The notes: generated from the letters alone by a model not told the origin. Shown: positions 1 through 24,654, counted from the first letter of the stretch. The stretch is DNA of 24,654 nt from Neoechinorhynchus agilis (GCA_051530055.1 JBMGUZ010000040.1:1-24654), one strand, 5' to 3'. Translations and numbers: made by a program.

Positions 1-117
1 GATCGAAATTTCTGATGACGTCATCGAGATTTTGGATGACGTCATCCAAATTTTTTATGACGTCATGGAAATTTTTATGACGTCATCGAGATTTTTAATG
101 ACGTAATCGAGATTTTT

Positions 118-129
118 GATGACGTCATC
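118..129. promoter_or_regulatory. Representative 12-bp palindrome GATGACGTCATC (CRE / ATF-CREB-type bZIP site motif), present in most monomers of the window
   Basis: TGACGTCA is the canonical CRE. The motif match is certain, but function as a binding site is not shown by the sequence. Confidence 0.4.
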
Positions 130-989
130 GAGATTTTTGATGACGTCATCGAGATTTTTTATGACGTCATGGAAATTTTTTTGACGTCATCGAAATTTTT
201 AATGACGTCATCGAGATTTTTGATGACGTCATCGAGATTTTTGATGACGTCATCGAGATTTTGGATGACGTCATCGAAACTTTTGATGACGTCATCGAGA
301 TTTTGGATGACGTCATCGAGATTTTTGATGACGTCATCGAGATTTTGGATGACGTCATCGAGATTTTTGATGACGTCATCGAGATTTTGGATGACGTCAT
401 CCAAATTTTTGATGACGTCATCAAGATTTTTATGACGTCATCGAGATTTTTGATGACGTCATCGAGATTTTTGATGACGTCATCGAAATTTTGATGACGT
501 CATCGAGATTTTTGATGACGTCATCGAAATTTTTGATGACGTCATCGAGATTTTTGATGACGTATCCAAATTTTTGATGACGTCATCGAGATTTTTGATG
601 ACGTCATCGAGATTTTTATGACGTCATCGAGATTTTTGATGACGTCATCTAGATTTTTGATGACGTCATCGAGATTTTTGATGACGTCATCGAGATTTTT
701 GATGACGTCATCGAGATTTTTGATGACATCATCGAGATTTTTATGACGTCATCGAGATTTTTGATGACGTCATCGAGATTTTTATGACGTCATCTAGATT
801 TTTTATGACGTCATCGAGATTTTTGATAACGTCATCGAGATTTTTGATGACGTCATCGAGATTTTTGGTGACGTCATCGAGATTTTTAATGACGTCATGG
901 AAATTTTTGATGACGTCATCGAAATTTTTGATGACGTCATCGAGATTTTTATGACGTCATGGATATTTTTGATGACGTCATCGAAATTT

Positions 990-2490
990 TTGATGACGTA
1001 ATCCCAATTTTTGATGACGTCATCGAGATTTTTATGACATCATCGAAATTTTAGATGACGTCATCGAGATTTTCGATGACGTCATCGAGATTTTTGATGA
1101 CGTAATCTATATTTTTTATGACGTCATCGAAATTTTTTGATGACGTCATCGAGATTTTTGATGACGTCATCGAGATTTTTGATGACGTCATCGAAATTTT
1201 TGATGACGTCATCGAGATTTTTGATGACGTCATCGAGATTTTTGATTACGTAATCCAAATTTTTGATTACGTCATCGAGATTTTTGATGACGTCATCGAG
1301 ATTTTTGATGACGTCATCGAGATTTTTTTGATGACGTCATCTAGATTTTTGACTACGTCATCGAGATTTTTGAGTACGTCATCGAAATTTTGTATGACGT
1401 CATCGAGATTTTTATGACGTCATCGATATTTTTGATGACGTCATGGAAATTTTTTTGACGTCATCGAGATTTTTGATGACGTCATCGAGATTTTTGATGA
1501 CGTCATCGAGATGACGTCATCGAGATTTTTGATGACGTCATCGAAATTTTTGATGACGTCATCGAGATTTTTGATGACGTCATCGAGATTTTGATGACGT
1601 CATCGAATTTTGATGACGTCATCGAGATTTTGATGACGTCATCGAGATTTTTGATGACGTCATCGAAATTTTTGATGACGTCATCAAGATTTTTATGACG
1701 TCATCGAGATTTTTGATGACGTCATCGAAATGACGTCATCGAAATTTTGATGACGTCATCGAATTTTTGATGACGTCATCGAAATTTTTGATGACGTCAT
1801 CGGGATTTTGATGACGTAATCCAAATTTTTGATGACGTCATCGAGATTTTTGATGACGTCATCGAGATTTTTTATGACGTCATCGAGATTTTTGATGACG
1901 TCATCGATTTTTGATGACGTCATCAGATTTTTGATGACGTCATCGAGATTTTTGATGACGTCATCGAGATTTTTGATGACGTCATCGAAATTTTTGATGA
2001 CGTCATCGAGATTTTTATGACGTCATCGATATTTTTGATGACGTCATCGAAATTTTTGATGACGTAATCCCAATTTTTGATGACGTCATCGAGATTTTTT
2101 ATGACATCATCGAAATTTTAGATGACGTCATCGAGATTTTCGATGACGTCATCGAGATTTTTGATGACGTAATCTATATTTTTTATGACGTCATCGAAAT
2201 TTTTTGATGACGTCATCGAGATTTTTGATGACGTCATCGAAATTTTTGATGACGTCATCGAAATTTTTGATGACGTCATCGAAATTTTTGATGACGTCAT
2301 CGAGATTTTTGATGACGTCATCGGGATTTTTGATTACGTAATCCAAATTTTTGATTACGTCATCGAGATTTTTGATGACGTCATCGAGATTTTTGATGAC
2401 GTCATCGAGATTTTTTTGATGACGTCATCTAGATTTTTGACTACGTCATCGAGATTTTTGAGTACGTCATCGAAATTTTATGACGTCATC
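990..2490 (+). repeat. Local duplication at offset about 1,067 bp (about 990-1420 vs 2057-2490)
   Basis: GTAATCCCAATT at 998/2064 and GTAATCTATATT at 1102/2169; near-identical ORFs 1118-1417 and 2185-2562. Confidence 0.8.
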
Positions 2491-2719
2491 GAGATTTTTA
2501 TGACGTCATCGAAATTTTTGATGACGTCATGGAAATTTTTGATGACGTCATCGGATTTTTGATACGTATCAAATTTTTGATACGTCATCGAGATTTTTGA
2601 TGACGTCATCGAGATTTTTGATGACGTCATCGAGATTTTTGATGACGTCATCGAGATTTTTGATTACGTCATCGAGATTTTTGATTACGTCATCGAAATT
2701 TTTTATGACGTCATCGAGA

Positions 2720-4684
2720 TTTTATGACGTCATCGATATTTTTGATGACGTCATGGAAATTTTTGATGACGTCATCCCAATTTTGATGACGTCATCGAGA
2801 TTTTTTATGACGTCATCGAAATTTTTGATGACGTCATCGAGATTTTTGATGACGTGATCGAAATTTCTGATGACGTCATCGAGATTTTGGATGACGTCAT
2901 CGAAATTTTTGACGACGTCATCGAGATTTTTCATGACGTCATCGGGATTTTTGGTTACGTAATCCAAATTTTTGATTACGTCATCGAGATTTTTGATGAC
3001 GTCATCGAGATTTTTGATGACGTCATCGAGATTTTTTTGATGACGTCATCCTGATTTTTGACTACGTCATCGAGATTTTTGAGTACGTCATCGAGATTTT
3101 TATGACGTCATCGATATTTTTGATGACGTCATGGAAATTTTTGATGACGTCATCGAGATTTTTGATGACGTCATCGAAATTTTTGATGACGTCATCGAGA
3201 TTTTTGATGACGTCATCGAAATTTCTGATGACGTCATCGAGATTTTTGATGACGTCATCCAAATTTTTTCTGACGTCATCAAGATTTTTTATGACGTCAT
3301 CGAGATTTTTGATGACGTCATCTAGATTTTTGATGACGTCATCGGGATTTTTGATGACGTGATCGAAATTTTTGATGACGTCATCGAGATTTTTGATGAC
3401 GTCATGGAGATTTTGGATGACGTCATCGAGATTTTTGATGACGTCATCCAAATTTTTTTGACGTCATCAAGATTTGATGACGTCATCGAGATTTTTCATG
3501 ACGTCATCGAAATTTTTGATGGCGTCATCGAGATTTTTGATTACGTCATCGAGATTTTTGATGACGTCATCTAGATTTTTGATGACGTCATCAAGATTTT
3601 GGATGACGTCATCGAGATTTTTGATGACGTCATCGAGATTTTTGATGACGTCATCCAAATTTTTGATGACGTGATCAAGATTTTTGATGACGTCATCGAG
3701 ATTTTTATGACGTCATCGAGATTTTTGATGACGTCATCGAGATTTTTGATGACGTCATCGAGATTTTTGATGACGTCATCGAGATTTTTGATGACGTCAT
3801 CGAGATTTTTGATGACGTCATCGAGATTTTTGATGACGTCATCGAGATTTTTGATGACGTCATCGAAATTTTTGATGACGTCATCGAGATTTTTGATGAC
3901 GTCATCGAAATTTTTGATGACGTCATCGAGATTTTTGATGACGTCATCGAGATTTTTGATGACGTCATCGAGATTTTTGATGACGTCATCGAAATTTTTT
4001 GATGACGTCATCGAGATTTTTGATGACGTCATCGAAATTTTGATGACGTCATCGAGATGATGACGTCATCGAATTTTTGATGACGTCATCGAGATTTTTG
4101 ATGACGTCATCGAATTTTTGATGACGTAATCCAAATTTTTGATTACGTCATCGAGATTTTTGAATGACGTCATCGAGATTTTGATGACGTCATCGAGATT
4201 TTTGATGACGTCATCGAGATTTTTGAGTACGTCATCGAAATTTTGTATGACGTCATCGAGATTTTTATGACGTCATCGATATTTTTGATGACGTCATGGA
4301 AATTTTTGATGACGTCATCCCAATTTTTGATGACGTCATCGAGATTTTTTATGACATCATCGAAATTTTTGATGACGTCATCGAGATTTTTGATGACGTG
4401 ATCGAAATTTCTGATGACGTCATCGAGATTTTTGATGACGTCATCGAAATTTTTGACGACGTCATCGAGATTTTTCATGACGTCATCGGGATTTTTGGTT
4501 ACGTAATCCAAATTTTTGATTACGTCATCGAGATTTTTGATGACGTCATCGAGATTTTTGATGACGTCATCGAGATTTTTTTGATGACGTCATCTAGATT
4601 TTTGACTACGTCATCGAGATTTTTGAGTACGTCATCGAGATTTTTATGACGTCATCGATATTTTTGATGACGTCATGGAAATTT
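2720..4684 (+). repeat. Local duplication at offset about 1,544 bp (about 2720-3140 vs 4264-4684)
   Basis: GACGAC at 2911/4455, GACTAC at 3060/4604 and GAGTAC at 3081/4625. Confidence 0.8.
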
Positions 4685-5839
4685 TTGATGACGTCATCCC
4701 AATTTTTGATGACGTCATCGAGATTTTTGATGACATCATCGAAATTTTTGATGACGTCATCGAGAATTTTGATGACGTGATCGAAATTTCTGATGACGTC
4801 ATCGAGATTTTTGATGACGTCATCGAGATTTTTGATGACGTCATCCAAATTTTTTCTGACGTCATCAAGATTTTTGATGACGTCATCGAAATTTTTATGA
4901 CGTCATCGAGATTTTTGATGACGTCATCTAGATTTTTGATGACGTCATCGGGATTTTTGATGACGTCATCGAAATTTTTGATGACGTCATCGAGATTTTT
5001 GATGACGTCATCGAGATTTTTGATGACGTCATCGAGATTTTTGATGACGTCATCGAAATTTTTGATGACGTCATCAAGATTTGATGACGTCATCGAGATT
5101 TTTGATGACGTCATCGAAATTTTTGATGACGTCATCGAGATTTTTGATTACGTCATCGAGATTTTTGATGACGTCATCTAGATTTTTGATGACGTCATCG
5201 AGATTTTTGATGACGTCATCGAAATTTTTGATGACGTCATCGAGATTTTTGATGACGTCATCGAAATTTTTGATGACGTGATCAAGATTTTTGATGACGT
5301 CATCGAGATTTTTATGACGTCATCGAGATTTTTGATGACGTCATCGAGATTTTTGATGACGTCATCGAGATTTTTGATGACGTCATCGAGATTTTTGATG
5401 ATGTCGAGATTTTTGATGATGTCATCGAGATTTTTGATGGCGTCATCGAGATTTTTGATGACGTCATCGAGATTTTTATGACGTCATCGATATTTTTGAT
5501 GACGTCATCGAAATTTTTGATGACGTCATCGAAATTTTTGATGACGTCATCGAGATTTTTGATGACATCATCGAAATTTTTGATGACGTCATCGAGATTT
5601 TTGATGACGTCATCGAGATTTTTGATGACGTAATCTATATTTTTGATGACGTCATCGAAATTTTTTGATGACGTCATCGAGATTTTTGATGACGCCATCG
5701 AAATTTTTGATGATGTCATCGAGATTTTTGATGACGTCATCATAATTTTTGATGACGTCATCGAGATTTTTGATGACGTCATCGGAATTTTTGATGACGT
5801 CATCCAAATTTTGATGACGTCATCGAGATTTTATATGAC

Positions 5840-7715
5840 GTCATCGAGATTTTTGAGGAAGTCATCTAGATTTTTGATGACGTCATCAGAATTTTTGATG
5901 ACGTGATCGAAATTTGTGATTACGTCATCGAGATTTTTGATGACGTCATGGAGATTTTGGATGACGTCATCGAGATTTTTGATGACGTCATCCAAATTTT
6001 TGATGACGTCATCAAGATTTGATGACGTTATCGAGATTTTTCATGACGTCATCGAAATTTTTGATGACGTCATCGAGATTTTTGATGACGTCATCGAGAT
6101 TTTTGATGACGTCATCGAGATTTTTGATGACGTCATCGAGATTTTTGATGACGTCATCGAGATTTTTGATGACGTCATCAAAATTTTTGATGACGTCATC
6201 AAGATTTTTGATGACGTCATCGAGATTTTTATGACGTCATCGAGATTTTTGATGACGTCATCGAGAATTTGATGACGTCATCGAAATTTTTGATGACGTC
6301 ATCGAGATTTTTGATGACGTCATCGAAATTTTTGATGACGTCATCGCGATTTTTGATGACGTCATCGGGATTTTTGATTACGTAATCCAAATTTTTGATG
6401 ACGTCATCGAGATTTTTGATGACGTCATCGAAATTTTTGATGACGTCATCGAGATTTTTTGATGACGTTATCGAGATTTTTTTGATGACGTCATCTAGAT
6501 TTTTGATGACGTCATCGAGATTTTTGATGACATCATCGAGATTTTTGATGACGTCATCGAGATTTTTTATGACCTCATCGAGATTTTTGATGACGTCAAC
6601 GAGATTTCTGATGACGTCATCGAGATTTTTTTGATGACGTCATCTAGATTTTGATGACGTCATCGAGATTTTTGATGACGTCATCGGGATTTTTGAATAC
6701 GTCATCAAGTTTTTTTTGATGACGTCATCTAGATTTTGATGACGTCATCGAGATTTTTTATGACGTCATCTAGATTTTGATGACGTCATCGAGATTTTTG
6801 ATGACGTCATCGAGATTTTTTTTGATGACGTCGTCTAGATTTTGATGACGTCATCGAGATTTTTGATGAAGTCATCGAGATTTTTTATGACGTCATCAAG
6901 ATTTTTGATGACGTCATCGAGATTTTTGATGACGTCATCGAGATTTTTTATGACGTCATGGAAATTTTTATGACGTCATCGAGATTTTTGATGACGTGAT
7001 CGAAATTTGTGATGACGTCATCGAAATTTTTGATGACGCCATCGAAATTTTTGATGACGGCATCGAGATTTTCTATGACGTCATGGAGATTTTAATGACG
7101 TCATCGAAATTTTTGATGACGTCATCGAGATTTTTGATGACGCCATCGAAATTTTTGATGATGTCATCGAGATTTTTGGTGACGTCATCGAAATTTTTGA
7201 TGACGTCATCGAGATTTTTGATTACGTGATAGAAATTTTTGATGACGTCATCGAGATTTTTGATGACGTCATCAAAATATCTTATGACGTCATCGAAATT
7301 TTTGATGACGTCATCGAGATTTTTGATGACGTCATCGGGATTTTTGGTTACGTAATCCAAATTTTTGATTACGTCATCGAGATTTTTGATGACGTCATCG
7401 AGATTTTTGATGACGTCATCGAGATTTTTTTGATGACGTCATCTGGATTTTTGACTACGTCATCGAGATTTTTGAGTACGTCATCGAAATTTTTTATGAC
7501 GTCATCGAGATTTTTAATACGTCATCGATATTTTTGATGACGTCATGGAAATTTTTGATGACGTCATCCCAATTTTTGATGAAGTCATCGAGATTTTTGA
7601 TGACATCATCGAAATTTTTGATGACGTCATCGAGATTTTTGATGACGTGATCGAAATTTCTGATGACGTCATCGAGATAATTGATGACGTCATCCAAATT
7701 TTTTCTGACGTCATC
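5840..7715 (+). repeat. Segmental duplication copy 1 (partner about 16946-18821, offset 11,106 bp)
   Basis: Identical translated ORFs 6996-7229/18102-18335, 7073-7360/18179-18466 and 7226-7537/18332-18643. Rare markers GTCAACGAGATTTCTG (6595/17701) and GAATACGTCATCAAG-T8 (6695/17801) sit at the same offset. Confidence 0.9.
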
Positions 7716-9021
7716 AAGGTTTTTGATGACGTCATCTAGATTTTTGATGACGTCATCGGGATTTTTGATGACGTGATCGAAATTTGTGATGACGTCATCG
7801 AGATTTTTGATGACGTCATGGAGATTTTGCATGACGTCATCGAGATTTTTGATGACGTCATCAAGATTTGATGACGTCATCGAGATTTTTCATGACGTCA
7901 TCGAAATTTTTGATGGCGTCATCGAGATTTTTGATCACGTCATCGAGATTTTTTATGACGTCATCTAGATTTTTGATGACGTCATCGAAATTTTTGATGA
8001 CGTCATCGCAACTTTTGATACGTCATCGACGTCATCGAGATTTTTGATGACGTCATCGAGATTTTGGATGACGTCATCGAAACTTTTGATGACGTCATCG
8101 AAATTTTTGATCACGCTATCGAAATTTTTGATTACGTCATCGAGATTTTTGATGACGTCATCGAGATTTTTGATGACGTCATCGAGATTTTTTTGATGAC
8201 GCCATCTAGATTTTTGACTACGTCATCGAGATTTTTGAGTACGTCATCGAAATTTTAGATGACGTCATCGAGATTTTTATGACGTCATCGAGATTTTTGA
8301 TGACGTCATAGAGAATTTGAATACGCCATCAAAATATTTGATGACGTCATCGAAATTTTTGATGACGTCATCGAGATTTTTGATGACGTCATCGAAATTT
8401 TTGATGACGTCATCGAGATTTTTGATGACGTCATCGAGATTTTTGATGACGTCATCGAGATTTTTTTGATGACGTCATCTAGATTTTTGACTACGTCATC
8501 GAGATTTTTGAGTACGTCATCGAAATTTTGTATGACGTCATCGAGATTTTTATGACGTCATCGATATTTTTGATGACGTCATGGAAATTTTTGATGACGT
8601 CATCCCAATTTTTGATGACGTCATCAAATTTTTTGACGTCATCAATTTTTATGACGTCATAATTTTTATGACGCATCGAGATTTTTTATGACATCATCGA
8701 AATTTTTGATGACGTCATCGAGATTTTTGATGACGTGATCGAAATTTCTGATGACGTCATCGAGATTTTGGATGACGTCATCGAGATTTTTGATGACGTC
8801 ATCCAAATTTTTTCTGACGTCATCAAGATTTTTTATGACGTCATGGAAATTTTTATGACGACATCGAGATTTTTGATGACGTCATCTAGATTTTTGATGA
8901 CGTCATCGGGATTTTTGATGACGTCATCGGGATTTTTGATGACGTGATCGAAATTTGTGATGACGTCATCGAGATTTTTGATGACGTCATGGAGATTTTG
9001 GATGACGTCATCGAGATTTTT

Positions 9022-11050
9022 GATGACGTCATCGCCATTTTTGATGACGTCATCGCCATGACGTCATCGTGAATTTTGATGACGTCATCGCCATGACGTC
9101 ATCGTGATTTTTGATGACGTCATCGCCATTTTTTATGACGTCATCGCCATGACGTCATCGTGATTTTTGATGACGTCATCGCCATTTTTGATGACGTCAT
9201 CGCCATTACGTCATCGTGATTTTTGATGACGTCATCGCCATGACGTCATCGTGATTTTTGATGACGTCATCGCCATTTTATATGACGTCATCGCCATGAC
9301 GTCATCGTGATTTTTTATGACGTCATCGCCATTTTTGATGACGTCATCGTGATTTTTGATGACGTCATCGCCATTTTTGATGACGTCATCGCCATGACGT
9401 CATCGTGATTTTTGATGACGTCATCGCCATTTTTGATGACGTCATCCCCATGACGCCATCGCGATTTTTGATGACGTCATCGCCATGACGTCATCGAGAT
9501 TTTTGATGACGTCATCGCCATTTTTGATTACGTCATCGCCATTTTTGATGACGTCATCGCGATTTTTGATTACGTCATCGCCATTTTTGATGACGTCATC
9601 GCCATGACGTCATCGTGATTTTTGATGACGTCATCGCCATTTTTGATGACGTCATCGCCATGACGTCATCGTGATTTTTGATGACGTCATCGCCATTTTT
9701 GATGACGTCATCGCCATGACGTCATCGTGATTTTTGATGACGTCATCGCCATTTTTGATGACGTCATCGCCATTTTTGATGACGTCATCGCCATGACGTC
9801 ATCGTGATTTTTGATGACGTCATCGCCATTTTTGATGACGTCATCGCCATGACGCCATCGCGATTTTTGATGACGTCATCGCCATGACGTCATCGTGATT
9901 TTTGATGACGTCATCGCCATTTTTGATGACGTCATCGCCATGACGTCATCGTGATTTTTTATGACGTCATCGCCATTTTTGATGACGTCATCGCCATGAC
10001 GTCATCGCGATTTTTGATGACGTCATCGCGATTTTTGATGACGTCATCGCCATTTTTGATGACGTCATCGCCATGACGTCATCGTGATTTTTGATGACGT
10101 CATCGCCATTTTTGATGACGTCATCGCCATGACGTCATCGTGATTTTTGATGACGTCATCGCCATTTTTGATGACGTCATCGCCATGACGTCATCGTGAT
10201 TTTTGATGACGTCATCGCCATGACGTCATCGTGATTTTTGATGACGTCATCGCCATTTTTGATGACGTCATCGCCATGACGTCATCGTGATTTTTGATGA
10301 CGTCATCGCCATGACGTCATCGTGATTTTTGATGACGTCATCGCCATTTTTGATGACGTCATCGCCATGACGTCATCGTGATTTTTGATGACGTCATCGC
10401 CATTTTTGATGACGTCATCGCCATGACGTCATCGTGATTTTTGAATACGTCATCGCCATGACGTCATCGTGATTTTTGATGACGTCATCGCCATTTTTGA
10501 TGACGTCATCGCCATGACGTCATCGTGATTTTTGATGACGTCATCGCCATTTTTGATGACGTCATCGCCATGACGTCATCGTGATTTTTGATGACGTCAT
10601 CGCCATTTTTGATGACGTCATCGCCATGACGTCATCGTGATTTTTGATGACGTCATCGCCATTTTTGATGACGTCATCGCCATGACGTCATCGTGATTTT
10701 TGATGACGTCATCGCCATTTTTGATGACGTCATCGCCATGACGTCATCGTGATTTTTGATGACGTCATCGCCATTTTTGATGACGTCATCGCCATGACGT
10801 CATCGTGATTTTTGATGACGTCATCGCCATTTTTGATGACGTCATCGCCATGACGTCATCGTGATTTTTGATGACGTCATCGCCATTTTTGATGACGTCA
10901 TCGCCATTTTTGAACGTCATCGTGATTTTTGATGACGTCATCGCCATTTTTGATGACGTCATCGCCATATACGTCATCGTTATTTTTGATGACGTCATCG
11001 CCATTTTTGATGACGTCATCCCATTTTTGATGAAGTCATCGCGATTTTTG
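9022..11050 (+). repeat. Type-B block 1: 56-bp higher-order repeat (21+21+14 bp) ATGACGTCATCGTGATTTTTG-ATGACGTCATCGCCATTTTTG-ATGACGTCATCGCC
   Basis: GCC/GTG spacers run from 9034 to about 11002. The 56-bp period has occasional 35-bp and 77-bp variants, and both edges are more degenerate. Confidence 0.95.
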
Positions 11051-12510
11051 ATGACGTCATCGAAATTTTTGATGACGTCATCGAGATTTTTGATGACGTC
11101 ATCGAAATTTTTGATGACGTCATCGACATTTTTGATGACGTCATCCAAATTTTTTATGACGTCATCAAGCTTTGACGTCATGGAAATTTTTATGACGTCA
11201 TCGAGATTTTTGATGACGTCATCTAGATTTTTGATGACGTCATCGGGATTTTTGATGACGTCATCGAAATTTGTGATGACGTCATCGAGATTTTTGATGA
11301 CGTCATCGAGATTTTGCATGACGTCATCGAGATTTTTGATGACGTCATCCAAATTTTTGATGACGTCATCAAGATTTGATGACGTCATCGAGATTTTTCA
11401 TGACGTCATCGAAATTTTTGATGACGTCATCGCCATTTTTGATACGTCATCGAGATTTTTGATGACGTCATCTAGATTTTTGATGACGTCATCGAAATTT
11501 TTGATGACGTCATCGCAACTTTTGATCACGTCATCGAGATTTTTGATGACGTCATCGAGATTTTGGATGACGTCATCGAAACTTTTGATGACGTCATCGA
11601 AATTTTTGATCACGCTATCGAAATTTTTGATTACGTCATCGAGATTTTATATGACGTCATCGAGATTTTTGATGACGTCATCGAGATTTTTTTGATGACG
11701 CCATCTAGATTTTTGACTACGTCATCGAGATTTTTGAGTACGTCATCGAAATTTTAGATGACGTCATCGAGATTTTTATGACGTCATCGAGATTTTTGAT
11801 GACGTCATAGAGAATTTGAATACGCCATCAAAATATTTGATGACGTCATCGAAATTTTTGATGACGTCATCAAAATATCTTATGACGTCATCGAAATTTT
11901 TGATGACGTCATCGAGATTTTTGATGACGTCATCGGGATTTTTTATTACGTAATCCAAATTTTTGATTACGTCATCGAGATTTTTGATGACGTCATCGAG
12001 ATTTTTTTGATGACGTCATCTAGATTTTTGACTACGTCATCGAGATTTTTGAGTACGTCATCGAAATTTTGTATGACGTCATCGAGATTTTTATGACGTC
12101 ATCGATATTTTTGATGACGTCATGGAAATTTTTGATGACGTCATCCCAATTTTTGATGACGTCATCGAGATTTTTTATGACATCATCGAAATTTTTGATG
12201 ACGTCATCGAGATTTTATATGACGTGATCGAAATTTCTGATGACGTCATCGAGATTTTGGATGACGTCATCGAGATTTTTGATGACGTCATCCAAATTTT
12301 TTCTGACGTCACCAAGATTTTTTATGACGTCATGGAAATTTTTATGACGACATCGAGATTTTTGATGACGTCATCTAGATTTTTGATGACGTCATCTGGA
12401 TTTTTGATGACGTCATCGGGATTTTTGATGACGTGATCGAAATTTGTGATGACGTCATCGAGATTTTTGATGACGTCATGGAGATTTTGGATGACGTCAT
12501 CGAGATTTTT
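11051..12510 (+). repeat. Type-A block 2 (about 1.46 kb), largely a copy of the distal end of type-A block 1
   Basis: GAG/GAA spacers. Shares rare markers with 7740-9021, e.g. CACGCTATC at 8112/11611 and GAGAATTTGAATACGCCATCAAAATATTTG at 8311/11810. Confidence 0.93.
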
Positions 12511-14430: not shown

Positions 14431-17400
14431 GATGACGTCATCGAGATTTTTGATGACGTCATCGAGATTTTGGATGACGTCATCGAAATTTTTGATGACG
14501 TCATCGAGATACGTCATCGAGATTTTTGATGACGTCATCGAGATTTTTGATGACGTCATCGAATTTTGATGACGTCATCGAGATTTTGGATGACGTCATC
14601 GAGATTTTTGATGACGTCATCGAGATTTTGGATGACGTCATCGAGATTTTTGATGACGTCATCGAGATTTTGGATGACGTCATCCAAATTTTTGATGACG
14701 TCATCAAGATTTTTATGACGTCATCGAGATTTTTGATGACGTCATCGAGAATTTGATGACGTCATCGAAATTTTTGATGACGTCATCGAGATTTCTGATG
14801 ACGTCATCGAAATTTTAAATGACGTCATCGGGATTTTTGATTACGTAATCCAAATTTTTGATGACGTCATCGAGATTTTTGATGACGTCATCGAGATTTT
14901 TTGATGACGTCATCGAGATTTTTGATGACGTCATCGAGATTTTTTTGATGACGTCATCTAGATTTTTGATGACGTCATCGAGATTTTTGATGACGTCATC
15001 GGGATTTTTGATGACATCATCGAGATTTTTGATGACCTCATCGAGATTTTTATGACGTCATCGAGATTTTTGATGACGTCATCGAGATTTTTGATGGCGT
15101 CATCGAGATTTTTGATGACGTCATCGAGATTTTTTTATGACGTCATCTAGATTTTTTATGACGTAATCGAGATTTTTGATAACGTCATCGAGATTTTTGA
15201 TGACGTCATCGAGATTTTTGGTGACGTCATCGAGATTTTTAATGACGTCATGGAAATTTTTGATGATGTCATCGAAATTTTTGATGACGTCATCGAGATT
15301 TTTATGACGTCATGGATATTTTTGATGACGTCATCGAAATTTTTGATGACGTAATCCCAATTTTTGATGACGTCATCGAGATTTTTTATGACATCATCGA
15401 AATTTTGGATGACGTCATCGAGATTTTCGATGACGTCATCGAGATTTTTGATGACGTAATCTATATTTTTTATGACGTCATCGAAATTTTTTGATGACGT
15501 CATCGAGATTTTTAATGACGCCATCGAAATTGTTTATGATGTCATCGAGATTTTTGATGACGTCATCATAATTTTTGATGTCGTCATCGAGATTTTTGAT
15601 GACGTCATCGAGATTTTTGATGACGTCATCGAGATTTTTGATGACGTCATCGAGATTTTTTTGATGACGTCATCTAGATTTTTTACTACGTCATCGAGAT
15701 TTTTGAGTACGTCATCGAAATTTTTGATGACGTCATCGAGATTTTTGATGACGTCATCGAGATTTTTATGACGTCATCGACATTTTTGATGACGTCATGG
15801 AAATTTTTGATGACGTCATCCCAATTTTTGATGACGTCATCGAGATTTTTGATGACATCATCGAAATTTTTGATGACGTCATCGAGATTTTTGATGACGT
15901 GATAGAAATTTTTGATGACGTCATCGAGATTTTTGATGACGTCATCAAAATATTTGATGACGTCATCGAAATTTTTGATGACGTCATCGAGATTTTTGAT
16001 GACGTCATCGAAATTTTTGACGACGTCATCAAGATTTGATGACGTCATCGAGATTTTTCATGACGTCATCGAAATTTTTGATGGCGTCATCGAGATTTTT
16101 GATTACGTCATCGAGATTTTTGATGACGTCATCTAGATTTTTGATGACGTCATCTAGATTTTTGATGACGTCATCGAGATTTTGGATGACGTCATCGAGA
16201 TTTTGGATGACGTCATCCAAATTTTTGATGACGTGATCAAGATTTTTGATGACGTCATCGAGATTTTTATGACGTCATCGAGATTTTTGATGACGTCATC
16301 GAGATTTTTGATGACATCATCGAGATTTTTGATGACGTCATCGAGATTTTTGATGACCTTATCGAGATTTTTGATGATGTCATCGAGATTTTTGATGGCG
16401 TCATCGAGATTTTTGATGACGTCATCGAGATTTTTGATGATGTCATCGAGATTTTTGATGGCGTCATCGAGATTTTTGGTGACGTCATCGAGATTTTTAA
16501 TGACGTCAATGAAATTTTTGATGACGTCATCGAGATTTTTGATGACGTCATCAAAATATTTGATGACGTCATCGAAATTTTTGATGACGTCATCGAGATT
16601 TTTGATGACGTCATCGAAATTTTTGACGACGTCATCGAAATTTTTGATGACGTCATCGAAATTTTTGACGACGTAATCGAGATTTTTGATGACGTCATCG
16701 AGATTTTTGATGACGTAATCTATATTTTTGATGACGTCATCGAAATTTTTTGATGACGTCATCGAGATTTTTTATGACGCCATCGAAATTTTTGATGATG
16801 TCATCGAGATTTTTGATGACGTCATCATAATTTTTGATGAAGTCATCGAGATTTTTGATGACGTCATCGGAATTTTTGATGACGTCATCCAAATTTTGAT
16901 GACGTCATCGAGATTTTTGATGACGTCATCGAGATTTTTGATGACGTCATCGAGATTTTTGAGGACGTCATCTAGATTTTTGATGACGTCATCAGAATTT
17001 TTGATGACGTGATGTAAATTTGTGATTACGTCATCGAGATTTTTGATGACGTCATGGAGATTTTGGATGACGTCATCGAGATTTTTGATGACGTCATCCA
17101 AATTTTTGATGACGTCATCAAGATTTGATGACGTTATCGAGATTTTTCATGACGTCATCGAAATTTTTGATGACGTCATCGAGATTTTTGATGACGTCAT
17201 CTAGATTTTTGATGACGTCATCGAGATTTTTGATGACGTCATCGAGATTTTTGATGACGTCATCGAGATTTTTGATGACGTCATCGAGATTTTGGAATAC
17301 GTCATCCAAATTTTTGATGACGTCATCAAGATTTTTGATGACGTCATCGAGATTTTTATGACGTCATCGAGATTTTTGATGACGTCATCGAGAATTTGAT

Positions 17401-20400
17401 TACGTCATCGATATTTTTGATGACGTCATCGCGATTTTTGATGACGTCATCGGGATTTTTGATTACGTAATCCAAATTTTTGATGACGTCATCGAGATTT
17501 TTGATGACGTCATCGAAATTTTTGATGACGTCATCGAGATTTTTTGATGACGTCATCGAGATTTTTGATGACGTTATCGAGATTTTTTTGATGACGTCAT
17601 CTAGATTTTTGATGACGTCATCGAGATTTTTGATGACATCATCGAGATTTTTGATGACGTCATCGAGATTTTTTATGACCTCATCGAGATTTTTGATGAC
17701 GTCAACGAGATTTCTGATGACGTCATCGAGATTTTTTTGATGACGTCATCTAGATTTTGATGACGTCATCGAGATTTTTGATGACGTCATCGGGATTTTT
17801 GAATACGTCATCAAGTTTTTTTTGATGACGTCATCTAGATTTTGATGACGTCATCGAGATTTTTTATGACGTCATCTAGATTTTGATGACGTCATCGAGA
17901 TTTTTGATGACGTCATCGAGATTTTTTTTGATGACGTCGTCTAGATTTTGATGACGTCATCGAGATTTTTGATGAAGTCATCGAGATTTTTTATGACGTC
18001 ATCAAGATTTTTGATGACGTCATCGAGATTTTTGATGACGTCATCGAGATTTTTTATGACGTCATGGAAATTTTTATGACGTCATCGAGATTTTTGATGA
18101 CGTGATCGAAATTTGTGATGACGTCATCGAAATTTTTGATGACGCCATCGAAATTTTTGATGACGGCATCGAGATTTTCTATGACGTCATGGAGATTTTA
18201 ATGACGTCATCGAAATTTTTGATGACGTCATCGAGATTTTTGATGACGCCATCGAAATTTTTGATGATGTCATCGAGATTTTTGGTGACGTCATCGAAAT
18301 TTTTGATGACGTCATCGAGATTTTTGATTACGTGATAGAAATTTTTGATGACGTCATCGAGATTTTTGATGACGTCATCAAAATATCTTATGACGTCATC
18401 GAAATTTTTGATGACGTCATCGAGATTTTTGATGACGTCATCGGGATTTTTGGTTACGTAATCCAAATTTTTGATTACGTCATCGAGATTTTTGATGACG
18501 TCATCGAGATTTTTGATGACGTCATCGAGATTTTTTTGATGACGTCATCTGGATTTTTGACTACGTCATCGAGATTTTTGAGTACGTCATCGAAATTTTT
18601 TATGACGTCATCGAGATTTTTAATACGTCATCGATATTTTTGATGACGTCATGGAAATTTTTGATGACGTCATCCCAATTTTTGATGAAGTCATCGAGAT
18701 TTTTGATGACATCATCGAAATTTTTGATGACGTCATCGAGATTTTTGATGACGTGATCGAAATTTCTGATGACGTCATCGAGATTTTTGATGACGTCATC
18801 CAAATTTTTTCTGACGTCATCAAGCTTTTTTTGACGTCATGGAAATTTTTATGACGTCATCGAGATTTTTGATGACGTCATCTAGATTTTTGATGACGTC
18901 ATCGGGATTTTTGATGACGTGATCGAAATTTGTGATGACGTCATCGAGATTTTTGATGACGTCATGGAGATTTTGGATGACGTCATCGAGATTTTTGATG
19001 ACGTCATCCAAATTTTTGATGACGTCATCAAGATTTGATGACGTCATCGAGATTTTTCATGACGTCATCGAAATTTTTGATGACGTCATCGAGATTTTTG
19101 ATGACGTCATCGAGATTTTATATGACGTCATCTAGATTTTTGATGACGTCATCGAGATTTTTGATGACGTCATCGAGATTTTTGATGACTTCATCGAGAT
19201 TTTTGATGACGTCATCGAGATTTTTGATGACGTCATCGAGATTTTTGATGACGTCATCGAGATTTTTGATGACGTCATCGAGATTTTTGATGACGTCATC
19301 TAGATTTTTGATGACGTCATCGAGATTTTTGATGACGTCATCGAGATTTTTGGTGACGTCATCGAGATTTTTAATGACGTCATGGAAATTTTTGATGACG
19401 TCATCGAAATTTTTGATGACGTCATCGAGATTTTTATGACGTCATGGATATTTTTGATGACGTCATCGAAATTTTTGATGACGTAATCCCAATTTTTGAT
19501 GACGTCATCGAGATTTTTTATGACATCATCGAAATTTTTGATGACGTCATCGAGATTTTTGATGACGTCATCGAGATTTTTGATGACGTAATCTATATTT
19601 TTGATGACGTTATCGAAATTTTTTGATGACGTCATCGAGATATTTGATGACGCCATCGAAATTTTTGATGATGTCATCGAGATTTTTGATGACGTCATCA
19701 TAATTTTTGATGACGTCATCGAGATTTTTGATGACGTCATCGGAATTTTTGATGACGTCATCCAAATTTTGATGACGTCATCGAGATTTTTGATGACGTC
19801 ATCGAGATTTTTTATGACATCATTTAAATTTTTGATGACGTCATCGGAATTTTTGATGACGTGATCGAAATTTGTGATGACGTGATCGAGATTTTTGATG
19901 ACGTCATGGAGATTTTGGATGACGTCATCGAGATTTTTGATGACGTCATCCAAATTTTTGATGACGTCATCAAGATTTGATGACGTCATCGAGATTTTTC
20001 ATGACGTCATCGAAATTTTTGATGGCGTCATCGAGATATTTGATTACGTCATCGAGATTTTTGATGACGTCATCGAGATTTTGGATGACGTCATCGAGAT
20101 TTTGGATGACGTCATCGAGATTTTTGATGACGTCATCGAGATTTTGGATGACGTCATCCAAATTTTTGATGACGTCATCAAGATTTTTGATGACGTCATC
20201 GAGATTTTTATGACGTCATCGAGATTTTTGATGACGTCATCGAGAATTTTATGACGTCATCGAAATTTTTTATGACGTCATCGCGATTTTTGATTACGTC
20301 ATCGGGATTTTTGATTACGTAATCCAAATTTTTGATGACGTCATCGAGATTTTTGATGACGTCATCGAAATTTTTGATGACGTCATCGAAATTTTTGATG

Positions 20401-21999
20401 ACGTCATCGAAATTTTTTTGATGACGTCATCTAGATTTTGATGACGTAATCTTGATTTTGATGACGTCATCTAGATTTTTGATGACGTCATCGGGATTTT
20501 TGAATACGTCATCAAGATTTTTTTGATGACGTCATCTAGATTTTGATGACGTCATCGAGATTTTTGATTACGTCATCGAGATTTTTTTTGATGACGTCGT
20601 CTAGATTTTGATTACGTCATCGAGATTTTTTTTGATGACGTCGTCTAGATTTTGATGACGTCATCGAGATTTTTTTGATGACGTCATCGAGATTTTTGAT
20701 GACGCCGTGGAAATTTTTATGACGTCATCTAGATTTTTGATGACGTCATCGAGATTTTTGGTGACGTCATCGAGATTTTTGATGACGTCGTCGAGATTTT
20801 GGATGACGTCATCCAAATTTTTTATGACGTCATCAAGATTTTTGATGACGTCATCGAGATTTTTGATGACGTCATCGAGATTTTTGATGACGTCATCGAG
20901 ATTTTTGATGACGTCATGGAGATTTTTGATGACGTCATCGAGATTTTTGATGACGTCATCCAAATTTTTTATGACGTCATGGAAATTTTTGTGACGTCAT
21001 CGAGATTTTTGATGACGTCATCTAGTTTTTTGATGACGTGATTGAAATTTGTTATGACGTCATCGAGATTTTTGATGACGTCAAGGAGATTTTGGATGAC
21101 GTCATCGAGATTTTTTATGACGTCATCGAAATTTTTGATGACGTCATCGAGATTTTTGATGACGCCATCGAAATTTTTGATGATGTCATCGAGATTTTTG
21201 ATGACGTCATCATAATTTTTGATGACGTAATCGAGATTTTTGATGACGTCATCGAAATTTTTGATTACGTCATCGAAATTTTTGATGACGTCAACGAAAT
21301 TTTTTATGACGTCACCGAAAATATTTATCACCGCATCGAAATTTTTTATGACGTCATCGCAACTTTTGGTCACGTCATCGAGATTTTTGATGACGTCATC
21401 GAGATTTTGGATGACGTCATCGAAACTTTTGATGACGTCATCGAAATTTTTGATGACGCTATCGAAATTTTTGATGACGGCATCGAGATTTTTGATGACG
21501 TCATGGAGATTTTTTATGACGTCATCGAAATTTTTGATGACGCCATCGAAATTTTTGATGATGTCATTGAGATTTTTGATGACGTCATCGAAATTTTTGG
21601 TGACGTCATCGAGATTTTTGATGACGTGATAGAAATTTTTGATGACGTCATCGAGATTTTTGATGACGTCATCGGGATTTTTGATTACGTAATCCAAATT
21701 TTTGATTACGTCATCGAGATTTTTGATGACGTCATCGAGATTTTTTATGACATCATCGAAATTTTTGATGACGTCATCGAGATTTTTGATAACGTCATCG
21801 AGATTTTTATGACGTAATCTATATTTTTGATGACGTCATCGAAATTTTTTGATGACGTCATCGAGATTTTTGATGACGTCATCGAAATTTTTGATTACGT
21901 AATATAACTTTTTGATTACGTCATCGAGATTTTTTATGACGTCATCGAGATTTTTGATGACGTCATCGAGATTTTTTTGATGACGTCATCGAGATTTTT
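14431..21999 (+). repeat. Type-A block 3 (about 7.6 kb), a mosaic of segments also found in type-A block 1
   Basis: GAG/GAA spacers. Shared markers with block 1, e.g. GTAATCTATATT at 15456, 16715, 19588 and 21814 versus 1102, 2169 and 5630. Confidence 0.95.
16946..18821 (+). repeat. Segmental duplication copy 2 (partner about 5840-7715)
   Basis: Same markers as copy 1 at +11,106. Looser homology extends to about 16230 and 19140. Confidence 0.9.
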
Positions 22000-24654
22000 G
22001 ATGACGTCATCGCCATGACGTCATCGTGATTTTTGATGACGTCATCGCCATTTTTGATGACGTCATCGCCATGACGTCATCGTGATTTTTGATGACGTCA
22101 TCGCCATTTTTGATGACGTCATCGCCATGACGTCATCGTGATTTTTGATGACGTCATCGCCATTTTTGATGACGTCATCGCCATGACGTCATCGTGATTT
22201 TTGATGACGTCATCGCCATTTTTGATGACGTCATCGCCATGACGTCATCGTGATTTTTGATGACGTCATCGCCATTTTTGATGACGTCATCGCCATGACG
22301 TCATCGTGATTTTTGATGACGTCATCGCCATTTTTGATGACGTCATCGCCATGACGTCATCGTGATTTTTGATGACGTCATCGCCATTTTTGATGACGTC
22401 ATCGCCATGACGTCATCGTGATTTTTGATGACGTCATCGCCATTTTTGATGACGTCATCGCCATGACGTCATCGTGATTTTTGATGACGTCATCGCCATT
22501 TTTGATGACGTCATCGCCATGACGTCATCGTGATTTTTGATGACGTCATCGCCATTTTTGATGACGTCATCGCCATGACGTCATCGTGATTTTTGATGAC
22601 GTCATCGCCATTTTTGATGACGTCATCGCCATGACGTCATCGTGATTTTTGATGACGTCATCGCCATTTTTGATGACGTCATCGCCATGACGTCATCGTG
22701 ATTTTTGATGACGTCATCGCCATTTTTGATGACGTCATCGCCATGACGTCATCGTGATTTTTGATGACGTCATCGCCATTTTTGATGACGTCATCGCCAT
22801 GACGTCATCGTGATTTTTGATGACGTCATCGCCATTTTTGATGACGTCATCGCCATGACGTCATCGTGATTTTTGATGACGTCATCGCCATTTTTGATGA
22901 CGTCATCGCCATGACGTCATCGTGATTTTTGATGACGTCATCGCCATTTTTGATGACGTCATCGCCATGACGTCATCGTGATTTTTGATGACGTCATCGC
23001 CATTTTTGATGACGTCATCGCCATGACGTCATCGTGATTTTTGATGACGTCATCGCCATATTTGATGACGTCATCGCCATGACGTCATCGTGATTTTTGA
23101 TGACGTCATCGCCATTTTTGATGACGTCATCGCCATGACGTCATCGTGATTTTTGATGACGTCATCGCCATTTTTGATGACGTCATCGCCATGACGTCAT
23201 CGTGATTTTTGATGACGTCATCGCCATTTTTGATGACGTCATCGCCATGACGTCATCGTGATTTTTGATGACGTCATCGCCATTTTTGATGACGTCATCG
23301 TGATTTTTGATGACGTCATCGCCATTTTTGATGACGTCATCGCCATGACGTCATCGTGATTTTTGATGACGTCATCGCCATTTTTGATGACGTCATCGCC
23401 ATGACGTCATCGTGATTTTTGATGACGTCATCGCCATTTTTGATGACGTCATCGCCATTTTTGATGACGTCATCGCCATGACGTCATCGTGATTTTTGAT
23501 GACGTCATCGCCATTTTTGATGACGTCATCGCCATTTTTGATGACGTCATCGCCATGACGTCATCGTGATTTTTGATGACGTCATCGCCATTTTTGATGA
23601 CGTCATCGCCATGACGTCATCGTGATTTTTGATGACGTCATCGCCATTTTTGATGACGTCATCGCCATGACGTCATCGTGATTTTTGATGACGTCATCGC
23701 CATTTTTGATGACGTCATCGCCATGACGTCATCGTGATTTTTGATGACGTCATCGCCATTTTTGATGACGTCATCGCCATGACGTCATCGTGATTTTTGA
23801 TGACGTCATCGCCATTTTTGATGACGTCATCGCCATGACGTCATCGTGATTTTTGATGACGTCATCGCCATTTTTGATGACGTCATCGCCATGACGTCAT
23901 CGTGATTTACATTGATGACGTCATCGCCATTTTTGATGACGTCATCGCCATGACGTCATCGTGATTTTTGATGACGTCATCGCCATTTTTGATGACGTCA
24001 TCGCCATGACGTCATCGTGATTTTTGATGACGTCATCGCCATGACGTCATCGTGATTTTTGATGACGTCATCGCCATTTTTGATGACGTCATCGCCATGA
24101 CGTCATCGTGATTTTTGATGACGTCATCGCCATGACGTCATCGTGATTTTTGATGACGTCATCGCCATTTTTGATGACGTCATCGCCATGACGTATCGTC
24201 GATTTTTGATGACGTCATCGCCATTTTTGATGACGTCATCGCCATGACGTCATCGTGATTTTTGATGACGTCATCGCCATTTTTGATGACGTCATCGCCA
24301 TGACGTCATCGTGATTTTTGATGACGTCATCGCCATTTTTGATGACGTCATCGCCATGACGTGATCGTGATTTTTGATGACGTCATCGCCATTTTTGATG
24401 ACGTCATCGCCATGACGTGATCGTGATTTTTGATGACGTCATGGCCATTTTTGATGACGTCATCGCCATGACGTGATCGTGATTTTTGATGACGTCATCG
24501 CCATTTTTGATGACGTCATCGCCATGACGTGATCGTGATTTTTGATGACGTCATCGCCATTTTTGATGACGTCATCGCCATGACGTGATCGTGATTTTTG
24601 ATGACGTCATGGCCATTTTTGATGACGTCATCGCCATGACGTGATCGTGATTTT
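22000..24654 (+). repeat. Type-B block 3: highly homogeneous 56-bp higher-order repeat, truncated by the window end
   Basis: TCATCGTGAT starts at 22021 and 22077 (period 56), continuing almost without substitutions to about 23050 and with few variants after that. Confidence 0.96.

What the first reader, a model, noticed from the sequence alone, without database searches (positions are those of the whole stretch)
1..24654. About 1,200 tandem copies of an extended CRE palindrome: candidate bZIP sponge, protein-scaffold or origin/segregation array
Seen: variation is concentrated in the spacer (GAG, GAA, GCC, GTG, CAA, TAG, T4-T8), while the core ATGACGTCAT is kept in the large majority of monomers of both subfamilies. 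Established: TGACGTCA is the ATF/CREB CRE, ATGACGT is the fission-yeast M26 Atf1-Pcr1 recombination-hotspot heptamer, and TGACG/GACGTC are plant TGA/C-box elements. From memory, in-vitro motifs of ATF2/ATF7/BATF3-type bZIP dimers extend to GATGACGTCATC; this needs confirming. Inference: such an array could titrate a dimeric factor, nucleate a centromere/partition-like or replication-origin complex, or act as a super-enhancer, loosely like the palindromic hr arrays of baculoviruses. I do not recognise it as a named satellite.
Basis: partly seen in the sequence, partly recalled or inferred. Interest (0 to 1): 0.8.

Follow-up and report, generated by a model that had tools for sequence, protein, structure and literature searches.

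The report
21-bp satellite DNA carrying CRE palindromes
The whole window is one long tandem array (about 1,200 copies of a 21-base unit) of the kind called satellite DNA, from an unidentified, probably eukaryotic genome. Each unit carries a perfect binding-site sequence for CREB/ATF/AP-1-type proteins, but nothing in the sequence shows that this site is what is being preserved.

Summary
The array is real. There are about 1,213-1,217 head-to-tail units with consensus GATGACGTCATCGAGATTTTT, all in one orientation. ATGACGTCAT occurs 953 times against 0.7 expected. There are no flanks, genes or RNA families.

The array has two interleaved domain types:
- A: 21-mers with GAG/GAA-type linkers.
- B: a 56-bp higher-order unit (21+14+21, GCC/GTG linkers).
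Multi-kb internal duplications are 98.8-100% identical. This is how satellite DNA normally evolves.

Variation sits at five positions only: GAG, plus the T|G junction after the T-run. The ATTTT box is as invariant as the palindrome. In domain A the main bZIP contact bases (G4, C9) vary about 10%, more than ATTTT does. So conservation does not single out the CRE.

The 12-mer does match published BATF3/FOS-type in-vitro motifs.

No relative was found in viral, prokaryotic, phage, plasmid, protein or paper-text searches. The one exception is a two-unit micro-array in a eukaryote-like metagenome contig. Dfam, Repbase and nt could not be searched, and the host is unknown.

Verdict: ordinary satellite, a new member of a known kind. 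bZIP binding, possibly ATF-type heterochromatin nucleation, is plausible but untested. The origin, partition and hr-like readings have no support.

The parts
1..24654 (+). Whole window: one head-to-tail array of a 21-bp satellite unit, consensus GATGACGTCATCGAGATTTTT. About 1,213-1,217 units in a single orientation; the array runs off both ends of the window.
   Evidence: TRF; wraparound alignment; spacer orientation 854 forward vs 6 reverse
118..138 (+). Example of the canonical unit. It holds a 12-bp perfect palindrome GATGACGTCATC (CRE core TGACGTCA), the variable linker GAG and the box ATTTTT.
1..9077 (+). Domain A1: 21-mers with GAG/GAA/TAG/CAA linkers. T-tracts are in helical phase.
9078..10987 (+). 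Domain B1: 56-bp higher-order repeat (GCC-21 + GCC-14/15 + GTG-20/21), irregular between 9414 and 10071.
10988..12566 (+). Domain A2
12567..14388 (+). Domain B2 (56-bp higher-order repeat)
14389..22055 (+). Domain A3
22056..24654 (+). Domain B3 (56-bp higher-order repeat). Its last 600 bp show a 112-bp super-unit that carries an ACGTGATC variant.
22070..22125 (+). Example of one exact 56-bp higher-order unit: CATGACGTCATCGTGATTTTT GATGACGTCATCGCCATTTTT GATGACGTCATCGC
   Evidence: 77 exact copies
5567..7700 (+). Segmental duplication inside the array, copy 1. It pairs with 16652-18806 at 98.8% identity.
16652..18806 (+). Segmental duplication, copy 2
8037..9058 (+). Segmental duplication that reaches the A-to-B junction, copy 1. 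It pairs with 11536-12547 at 98.9% identity; the sequence across the junctions at 9077 and 12566 is nearly the same.
11536..12547 (+). Segmental duplication that reaches the A-to-B junction, copy 2
1496..1526 (+). Isolated 14-bp unit in domain A, made by a 7-bp deletion of ATTTTTG between short direct repeats. A second, independent case lies at 1716-1745.

Best explanation
This is a stretch of satellite DNA from an unidentified, most likely eukaryotic, genome.

Shown:
- A 21-bp unit has been amplified head-to-tail to at least 24.6 kb.
- The array is kept homogeneous and reshuffled by in-register exchange and segmental duplication. These produce two interleaved domain types, a 56-bp higher-order unit and multi-kb blocks that are 98.8-100% identical.
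- Short deletions between direct repeats also occur (the 14-bp units).
- Each unit consists of a 12-bp perfect palindrome identical to the optimal in-vitro site of CRE-type bZIP dimers, a 3-nt variable linker, and an ATTTT(T) box.
- In domain A the unit length equals two helical turns. All T-tracts and all palindromes therefore lie on one face of the helix, so this DNA is predicted to be intrinsically curved. In domain B that phasing is lost but the palindrome is kept.

Inferred, not shown:
- In the cell the array is packaged as constitutive heterochromatin.
- Its palindromes are occupied by an ATF/CREB-family bZIP. The ATF2/ATF7/Atf1 class is known elsewhere to recruit H3K9 methyltransferases and HP1.
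- The AT box offers curvature or a minor-groove (AT-hook type) site.
- Any titration of bZIP factors would be a side effect of copy number.

The conservation pattern is what concerted evolution of a young array gives. It does not by itself show selection on the CRE.
For: Anatomy:
- Tandem structure, copy number and orientation.
- Domain map and the 56-bp higher-order unit (77 exact copies).
- Internal duplications 98.8-100% identical, with in-register junctions.
- Recurrent 7-bp deletions.

Non-coding and without relatives:
- No genes. ORFs exist only because 21 bp = 7 codons with stop-free frames. They have no homologues and are not on record. No Rfam family matched.
- Absent from prokaryotic genomes, viral contigs, phages and plasmids.
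- The only relative is a two-unit micro-array with the same 21-bp spacing in L001, a gene-poor, minisatellite-rich metagenome contig. Its complete unit differs from the consensus only at hot sites 13 and 15.

Motif and structure:
- The palindrome matches published bZIP motifs.
- ATF/CREB proteins nucleate or occupy heterochromatin: Atf1/Pcr1 at the S. pombe mat locus (PMC10863984); ATF7 and dATF-2 at pericentric heterochromatin, recruiting H3K9 methyltransferases (PMC9890523).
- T-tract helical phasing R=0.86-0.92 in A domains against about 0.2 in B domains.
- CpG transitions are not elevated. This fits an unmethylated or very young array; established knowledge says methylation of the central CpG blocks CREB/ATF binding.
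Against: - No binding, chromatin or localisation data exist, and the host is unknown.
- Conservation does not single out the CRE. ATTTT is equally or more invariant.
- In domain A the critical half-site bases G4 and C9 are 9-10% non-consensus, and 25-28% of units lack a canonical CRE.
- Rare single-change variants are spread evenly over core and spacer, although that test is biased against the hot sites.
- The hot sites beside the T-run could be purely mutational (misalignment next to a homopolymer).
- A eukaryotic origin is inferred from absence elsewhere and from array architecture. It is not demonstrated.
Confidence: 0.55

Rival explanations
1. Purely selfish, structure-driven satellite. 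The palindrome persists because neighbouring palindromes on a single strand pair into 12-15-bp hairpins. These promote replication slippage and unequal exchange, so units with intact palindromes are preferentially re-amplified. No protein recognises the CRE in any way that matters.
For: - Single-stranded DNA of six units folds with neighbouring palindromes paired: -32.9 kcal/mol, z=-9.1 against shuffles.
- All rearrangements are in register.
- No excess conservation of the bZIP contact bases over the ATTTT box.
- Rare variants are evenly spread.
Against: - It does not explain why ATTTT, which forms the loop rather than the stem, is just as invariant.
- It does not explain why the palindrome equals the optimal bZIP site to 12-13 of 14 bases rather than being an arbitrary palindrome.
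- Hairpin-driven amplification bias is itself untested here.
Confidence: 0.27
2. Centromeric satellite. The array is the CENH3-loaded repeat of the host, and the palindrome acts as a CENP-B-box-like motif or as a non-B-DNA signal.
For: - Long homogeneous arrays with higher-order units and nested duplications are typical of centromeric repeats.
- Short dyad symmetries are common in centromeric satellites (established knowledge).
- Very short centromeric units are known, for example the roughly 20-bp repeat of Astragalus sinicus (from memory, not checked here).
Against: - No positional information at all.
- The 12-bp palindrome has no loop, so it is a weak cruciform former in duplex DNA.
- Most satellites are not centromeric.
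Confidence: 0.12
3. Regulatory sponge. The array has been selected to titrate a dimeric bZIP factor and so buffers or gates CRE-dependent transcription.
For: - One optimal site per 20-29 bp, 953 in this fragment alone.
- Published motifs match.
- Sequestration of a bZIP (C/EBP alpha) by mouse major satellite has been reported. This is from memory; my paper searches for it did not retrieve the report (one search was rejected by the tool).
Against: - No evidence of selection on the contact bases.
- Total copy number, accessibility and methylation are unknown.
- Heterochromatic packaging would normally limit access.
Confidence: 0.06
4. Replication origin, partition or viral hr-like enhancer array on a virus, plasmid or other extrachromosomal element; or a technical artefact such as rolling-circle amplification or misassembly.
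For: Only the loose analogy of repeated palindromes. The window has no flanks, so its replicon is formally unknown.
Against: - 24.6 kb without one gene.
- No array in 2.9 million viral contigs. The 7 single-unit hits there are about the number I estimated for chance.
- Nothing in phages or plasmids beyond 51-nt marginal hits, and nothing in 185,579 prokaryotic species genomes.
- Baculovirus hr regions, as I recall them, are about 30-bp imperfect palindromes in a few copies between genes.
- An amplification artefact would give uniform copies with random errors. It would not give two subfamilies, a 56-bp higher-order unit and nested duplications.
Confidence: 0.03

Closest known systems
Eukaryotic satellite DNA with higher-order repeats and a conserved protein-binding box (e.g. 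alpha satellite with the CENP-B box)
   Same: Long head-to-tail array, subfamilies in blocks, higher-order units, nested near-identical duplications, and invariant boxes separated by variable positions.
   Different: The unit is only 21 bp, against about 171 bp for alpha satellite. The box is a bZIP CRE palindrome, not a CENP-B box. Host, chromosomal location and binding protein are unknown.
ATF/CREB-dependent heterochromatin (S. pombe Atf1/Pcr1 sites s1/s2-REIII at the mat locus; Drosophila dATF-2; mammalian ATF7 at pericentric heterochromatin)
   Same: The same recognition sequence class (ATGACGT / TGACGTCA). Those proteins recruit H3K9 methylation and HP1 (PMC10863984, PMC9890523).
   Different: The known cases, as described in those papers, use a few sites or unmapped sites, not a satellite in which every unit is an optimal CRE. 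No binding is shown here.
Satellites that concentrate sequence-specific factors (Drosophila D1/Prod and AT-hook proteins on AT-rich satellites; HSF1 on human satellite III; C/EBP alpha on mouse major satellite). Recalled from memory, except the AT-hook review PMC11354804, which was only listed.
   Same: A high density of a factor's site in a tandem repeat. The ATTTT box could serve minor-groove binders.
   Different: This is a different motif and there are no experimental data. Here the site is a full consensus palindrome in roughly three quarters or more of the units.
Curved satellite DNAs with helically phased A/T-tracts
   Same: In domain A the T5 tracts recur every 21 bp, which is two helical turns. 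Phasing R=0.86-0.92.
   Different: Domain B abolishes the phasing (R about 0.2) yet was amplified all the same, so curvature is not a universal requirement of this family.
Baculovirus hr regions and the fission-yeast M26 hotspot
   Same: Repeated palindromes (hr). The ATGACGT heptamer is contained in the core (M26).
   Different: hr regions, as I recall them, are about 30-bp imperfect palindromes in a few copies, interspersed among viral genes. No viral relative or gene is present here. M26 is a single-site meiotic hotspot, not a satellite.

Membership tests
Satellite DNA | Head-to-tail tandem units forming an array of many kilobases | tested here: met
   TRF 2..24633, period 21, 1213 copies; 1217 units by wraparound alignment
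Satellite DNA | Concerted evolution: subfamilies in blocks, higher-order repeats, in-register duplications | tested here: met
   A and B domains; 56-bp unit with 77 exact copies; 112/168-bp super-periods; duplicated blocks 98.8-100% identical
Satellite DNA | Non-coding | tested here: met
   ORFs are frame artefacts of a 7-codon unit and have no homologues; no Rfam family
Satellite DNA | High genomic abundance and heterochromatic, centromeric or subtelomeric location in a eukaryotic chromosome | not testable with these tools
   No flanks in the window and no eukaryotic genome collection. The only indirect support is absence from prokaryotic, viral, phage and plasmid collections.
CRE-type bZIP binding site | Core TGACGTCA with palindromic flanks matching in-vitro motifs | tested here: met
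   981 exact 8-mers, 953 10-mers, 718 12-mers. BATF3 TGATGACGTCATCA, FOS GATGACGTCATCA and FOSL1::JUN ATGACGTCAT in the literature.
CRE-type bZIP binding site | Contact bases conserved above neighbouring non-contact bases | tested here: not met
   In domain A, G4 is 10% and C9 9% non-consensus against 0-3% for ATTTT. Core and ATTTT are equally cold in paralogue differences, p=0.71.
CRE-type bZIP binding site | Actual occupancy by a bZIP protein | not testable with these tools
   Needs EMSA, pull-down or ChIP in the host
Baculovirus hr / viral enhancer-origin repeats | Short clusters of about 30-bp imperfect palindromes dispersed among viral genes | tested here: not met
   12-bp palindrome, about 1,200 copies, no genes; no viral contig with an array
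Plasmid or prokaryotic iteron/partition arrays | Located on a prokaryotic replicon next to rep/par genes | tested here: not met
   No match in plasmids or in 185,579 species genomes; no genes in the window
An already described, named satellite | Sequence match to a published or catalogued repeat | tested here: inconclusive
   No 15-20-mer of the unit, in any rotation or strand, occurs in 8.3 million full texts. No paper joins the CRE sequence with satellite DNA. Dfam, Repbase, nt and supplementary satellitome tables could not be searched.

The most novel reading that the evidence does not exclude
A satellite whose every unit is an optimal CRE and which is the natural, large-scale platform for ATF2/ATF7/Atf1-type bZIPs. 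Heterochromatin over the whole array would then be nucleated directly by a stress-kinase-regulated transcription factor and released on stress. This would be a sequence-encoded, environmentally switchable heterochromatin block and, as a by-product, a bZIP reservoir.
Probability: 0.12. Interest if true: 0.7.

Novelty: new member of a known kind. Interest (0 to 1): 0.3.

Why it matters
If a bZIP really occupies this repeat, it would be a clean natural system for asking how a sequence-specific, signal-regulated transcription factor builds or dissolves satellite heterochromatin. There would be more than a thousand optimal sites in register on one helical face in domain A, and the same sites out of register in domain B. 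That amounts to a built-in comparison of site phasing. As the evidence stands, this is an otherwise ordinary satellite of unknown host. Its main practical value is as a repeat-library entry and as a caution: a perfect transcription-factor motif in a satellite is not in itself evidence of selection.

Tried and rejected
Host identification and search for relatives:
- Exact and degenerate two-unit patterns found nothing in viral contigs or in prokaryotic genome contigs.
- The one metagenome scan gave a single hit, L001.
- A single-unit pattern in viral contigs gave 7 isolated hits, about the number I estimated for chance.
- blastn against phages gave only 51-nt marginal hits in Paenibacillus phages (E about 1e-3), which I treat as chance. 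Plasmids gave nothing.

Reaching the source through protein space:
- Three exact look-ups of window ORFs were not on record.
- A homologue search with the DDVIEIF-frame ORF gave only P0001, a bacterial protein with an unrelated short heptad repeat next to LysR and glycosyltransferase genes. I rejected it.
- A search with the other three open frames found nothing.

Other searches:
- Rfam on the window and L001 found nothing.
- ARAGORN and an inverted-repeat search on L001 gave no tRNA, SINE or TIR evidence.
- Literature: no text hit for the unit or for CRE plus satellite. The metagenome id was not found. The C/EBP-satellite sequestration report I recall could not be retrieved (one search was rejected by the tool). 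One search was empty.

A test I discounted: rare single-change variants looked uniform across the unit. The test cannot count switches between common linker variants, so it is biased against the hot sites. I replaced it with differences between duplicated blocks.
Full report
**1. What is there**

The whole 24,654-bp window is one tandem array.
- Tandem Repeats Finder reports a single array, 2..24633, with period 21, 1213 copies and 81% matches. The consensus is ATCGAGATTTTTGATGACGTC, a rotation of GATGACGTCATCGAGATTTTT.
- A wraparound alignment to the cyclic consensus cuts the window into 1217 units. Of these, 939 are 21 bp, 92 are 20 bp and 115 are 14 bp.
- ATGACGTCAT occurs 953 times, against 0.73 expected from dinucleotide-preserving shuffles. 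TGACGTCA occurs 981 times and the 12-bp perfect palindrome GATGACGTCATC 718 times.
- The array is in one orientation throughout: 854 forward against 6 reverse spacer signatures.
- It runs off both ends of the window, so the window has no flanking sequence.

**2. Architecture**

Two kinds of domain alternate.
- Domain A covers 1-9077, 10988-12566 and 14389-22055. It is made of 21-mers with GAG, GAA, TAG, CAA and similar linkers.
- Domain B covers 9078-10987, 12567-14388 and 22056-24654. It is a 56-bp higher-order unit: GCC-21, a shortened GCC unit that lacks ATTTTTG, and GTG-20/21. There are 77 exact copies.
- Domain B also shows 112- and 168-bp super-periods.

Inside the array there are multi-kb duplications.
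- 5567-7700 pairs with 16652-18806 at 98.8% identity.
- 8037-9058 pairs with 11536-12547 at 98.9%. This duplication reaches the A-to-B junction, and the sequence across the junctions at 9077 and 12566 is nearly the same. The third A-to-B junction, at 22055, has a different context.
- Several smaller pairs are up to 100% identical. All junctions are in register.

Seven-bp deletions between short direct repeats (GAT...GAT or AT...AT) arose more than once. Besides the B unit there are isolated 14-mers at 1496-1526 and 1716-1745.

This is the usual signature of satellite DNA evolving by unequal exchange, segmental amplification and slippage.

**3. Where the variation is**

Position by position (independently) the picture is sharper.

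| Positions | Sequence | Non-consensus |
|---|---|---|
| 2-12 | palindrome | 0.7-6.7% |
| 13-15 | GAG | 14-33% |
| 16-20 | ATTTT | 0.4-2.5% |
| 21 and 1 | T and G, beside the T-run | intermediate |

Copy-weighted frequencies reflect amplification history. I therefore also counted differences between near-identical duplicated blocks.
- Of 55 differences, 32 fall on the five sites 13-15, 21 and 1, against 13.1 expected (p about 2e-9).
- The core has 1.4 differences per site and ATTTT 1.6 per site. They are indistinguishable (p=0.71).
- Some block pairs overlap, and switches between common variants may be gene conversion rather than mutation. The counts are therefore not fully independent events.

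Within domain A alone:
- The two bases most critical for bZIP half-site recognition, G4 and C9, are 10% and 9% non-consensus.
- ATTTT is 0-3% non-consensus.
- Only 72% of units keep the exact 10-mer.

Domain B keeps it in 94% of units because it is very homogeneous.

A first test on rare single-change variants looked uniform. It is biased against the hot sites, and I do not rely on it.

The conclusion is that the unit has two invariant boxes, the palindrome and ATTTT, joined by two short variable linkers.

The junction hot sites (G1 to T, T21 to G) extend or shorten the run beside a homopolymer. They may be mutational; this is inference.

Transitions at the two CpGs are not elevated (C6>T 1.0%, G7>A 1.6%, against T8>C 1.65%). 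This fits an unmethylated or very young array.

**4. Physical properties**

- A unit of 21 bp is two turns of B-DNA. The T-tracts of domain A are almost perfectly in helical phase: resultant R is 0.86-0.92 at 10.5 bp per turn, against about 0.3 for random placement.
- From established knowledge of phased A-tracts, domain A is therefore predicted to be intrinsically curved, with all palindromes on one face.
- In domain B the 21/35-bp spacing rotates successive tracts by 120 degrees and R falls to about 0.2. The feature common to both domains is the palindrome, not the curvature.
- As single-stranded DNA, neighbouring palindromes pair into 12-15-bp stems (-32.9 kcal/mol for 126 nt, z=-9.1). This gives a plausible slippage mechanism.
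- In duplex DNA the 12-bp palindrome has no loop and should be a poor cruciform former (inference).

**5. Coding and RNA**

A 21-bp unit is seven codons, and two frames per strand are free of stops. This is why ORFs of up to 275 aa appear.
- They have no homologues. One search returned only an unrelated bacterial protein, and a search of the other frames returned nothing.
- They are not on record as called genes.
- No Rfam family matches.

**6. Relatives and host**

- No array or two-unit match exists in 2.9 million viral contigs.
- None exists in one genome each of 185,579 prokaryotic species.
- Phages gave only 51-nt marginal hits, and plasmids gave nothing.
- Single-unit matches in viral contigs (7 isolated hits) are about the number I estimated for chance.

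The single real relative is L001, metagenome contig Ga0099797_103640.
- It is AT-rich, has essentially no ORFs, and carries 100-, 92- and 25-bp tandem arrays. That makes it eukaryote-like.
- It contains TGATGACGTCATCAATATTTT TGATGACGTCATCAC, with a degenerate unit beside it, at the same 21-bp spacing.
- Its complete unit differs from the window consensus only at hot sites 13 and 15.
- This looks like a short 'seed' array of the same family in a related genome. The idea that satellites expand from dispersed micro-arrays comes from my own knowledge.

The host of the window remains unknown. A eukaryotic origin is inferred, not shown.

**7. The motif**

The BATF3 HT-SELEX motif is TGATGACGTCATCA (PMC5449588). 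JASPAR FOS MA1951.1 is GATGACGTCATCA and FOSL1::JUN MA1129.1 is ATGACGTCAT (PMC9164029).
- With its flanks the satellite reads TGATGACGTCATCG, 13 of 14 identical to the BATF3 motif.
- ATF/CREB proteins are linked to heterochromatin. Atf1/Pcr1 nucleate it at the fission-yeast mat locus independently of RNAi (PMC10863984). ATF7 and dATF-2 sit at pericentric heterochromatin, and ATF7 recruits H3K9 methyltransferases (PMC9890523).

**8. Most likely explanation and rivals**

Best explanation (confidence about 0.55 for the whole statement, and about 0.9 for the bare claim that this is satellite DNA): an ordinary satellite that probably lies in heterochromatin. Its built-in optimal CRE is probably occupied by an ATF/CREB-type bZIP that helps recruit H3K9 methylation. 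The ATTTT box would supply curvature or a minor-groove site. The steps from sequence to binding and chromatin are inference.

Rivals:
- A purely selfish, hairpin-driven repeat with no meaningful protein recognition (0.27).
- A centromeric repeat (0.12; not exclusive of the best explanation).
- A selected bZIP sponge (0.06).
- An origin, partition or hr-like element, or an artefact (0.03). The structured subfamilies and nested duplications argue against an amplification artefact. The absence of genes and of viral or plasmid relatives argues against the others.

**9. Comparison with what is known, and novelty**

- It meets every testable defining feature of satellite DNA (tandem, long, concerted evolution, non-coding). 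Abundance and location could not be tested.
- It is a sequence-level match to CRE-type bZIP sites, but it fails the test that contact bases are better conserved than neighbouring non-contact bases.
- It is not a baculovirus hr and not a prokaryotic iteron array.
- I found no description of it in 8.3 million full texts. Dfam, Repbase, nt and supplementary satellitome tables were not available, so 'undescribed' is provisional.
- I rate it a new member of a known kind, with interest 0.3. The perfect bZIP palindrome in every unit and the two differently phased architectures make a tidy experimental system. Nothing here is surprising for satellite biology, and the host is unknown.
- The most novel reading still open is a stress-switchable, ATF-nucleated satellite heterochromatin. 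I give it a probability of about 0.12.

Noticed in passing
L001 3590-3680 (metagenome contig Ga0099797_103640): A micro-array of two to three units of the same motif at 21-bp spacing (TGATGACGTCATCAATATTTT TGATGACGTCATCAC). It sits in a eukaryote-like, essentially ORF-free contig. Its complete unit differs from the window consensus only at the hot linker sites 13 and 15. It may be a 'seed' of the satellite in a related genome.
   Followed up: partly
L001 18-3057 and 5500-5704: The same contig carries three other tandem arrays (100-bp x 13.6 copies, 92/369-bp x 10, 25/75-bp x 8). It also has several isolated TGACGTCA-like sites and a G24 run. No tRNA-like or TIR structure was found.
   Followed up: partly
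window, domains A vs B (e.g. 14389-22055 vs 22056-24151): T-tracts are helically phased in A (R about 0.9) and actively dephased in B (R about 0.2, below random). B's 168-bp super-period equals exactly 16 helical turns. The two domain types should therefore differ sharply in intrinsic curvature.
   Followed up: partly
window 1496-1526 and 1716-1745: Isolated 14-bp units in domain A show the same 7-bp deletion (ATTTTTG lost between short direct repeats) that defines the short unit of the B higher-order repeat. The deletion is therefore recurrent.
   Followed up: partly
window 10868-11695 (+), 21038-21817 (+), 19300-19989 (-) and others: ORFs of 150-275 aa encode heptad repeats (DDVIEIF, MTSSRFL, KNLDDVI, KISMTSS). 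They arise only because the unit is seven codons with two stop-free frames per strand, and they have no homologues.
   Followed up: yes
window, positions 6-7 and 12-13 of every unit: The two CpGs per unit show no excess of C>T/G>A transitions over non-CpG sites. This suggests little CpG methylation-driven decay, or a very young array.
   Followed up: partly
window 24041-24654: The last 600 bp show a 112-bp super-unit (two 56-mers) marked by an ACGTGATC variant of the core. This variant turns one CRE half-site into an ACGTG (G-box-like) sequence.
   Followed up: no
L002 1810-2916 (Logan SRR34260823 contig): Bacterial protein P0001 has an N-terminal run of about six FDNVIE(T/A) heptads resembling the DDVIEIF translation. 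It sits among LysR, glycosyltransferase and methyltransferase genes. I judged the resemblance to be chance.
   Followed up: yes
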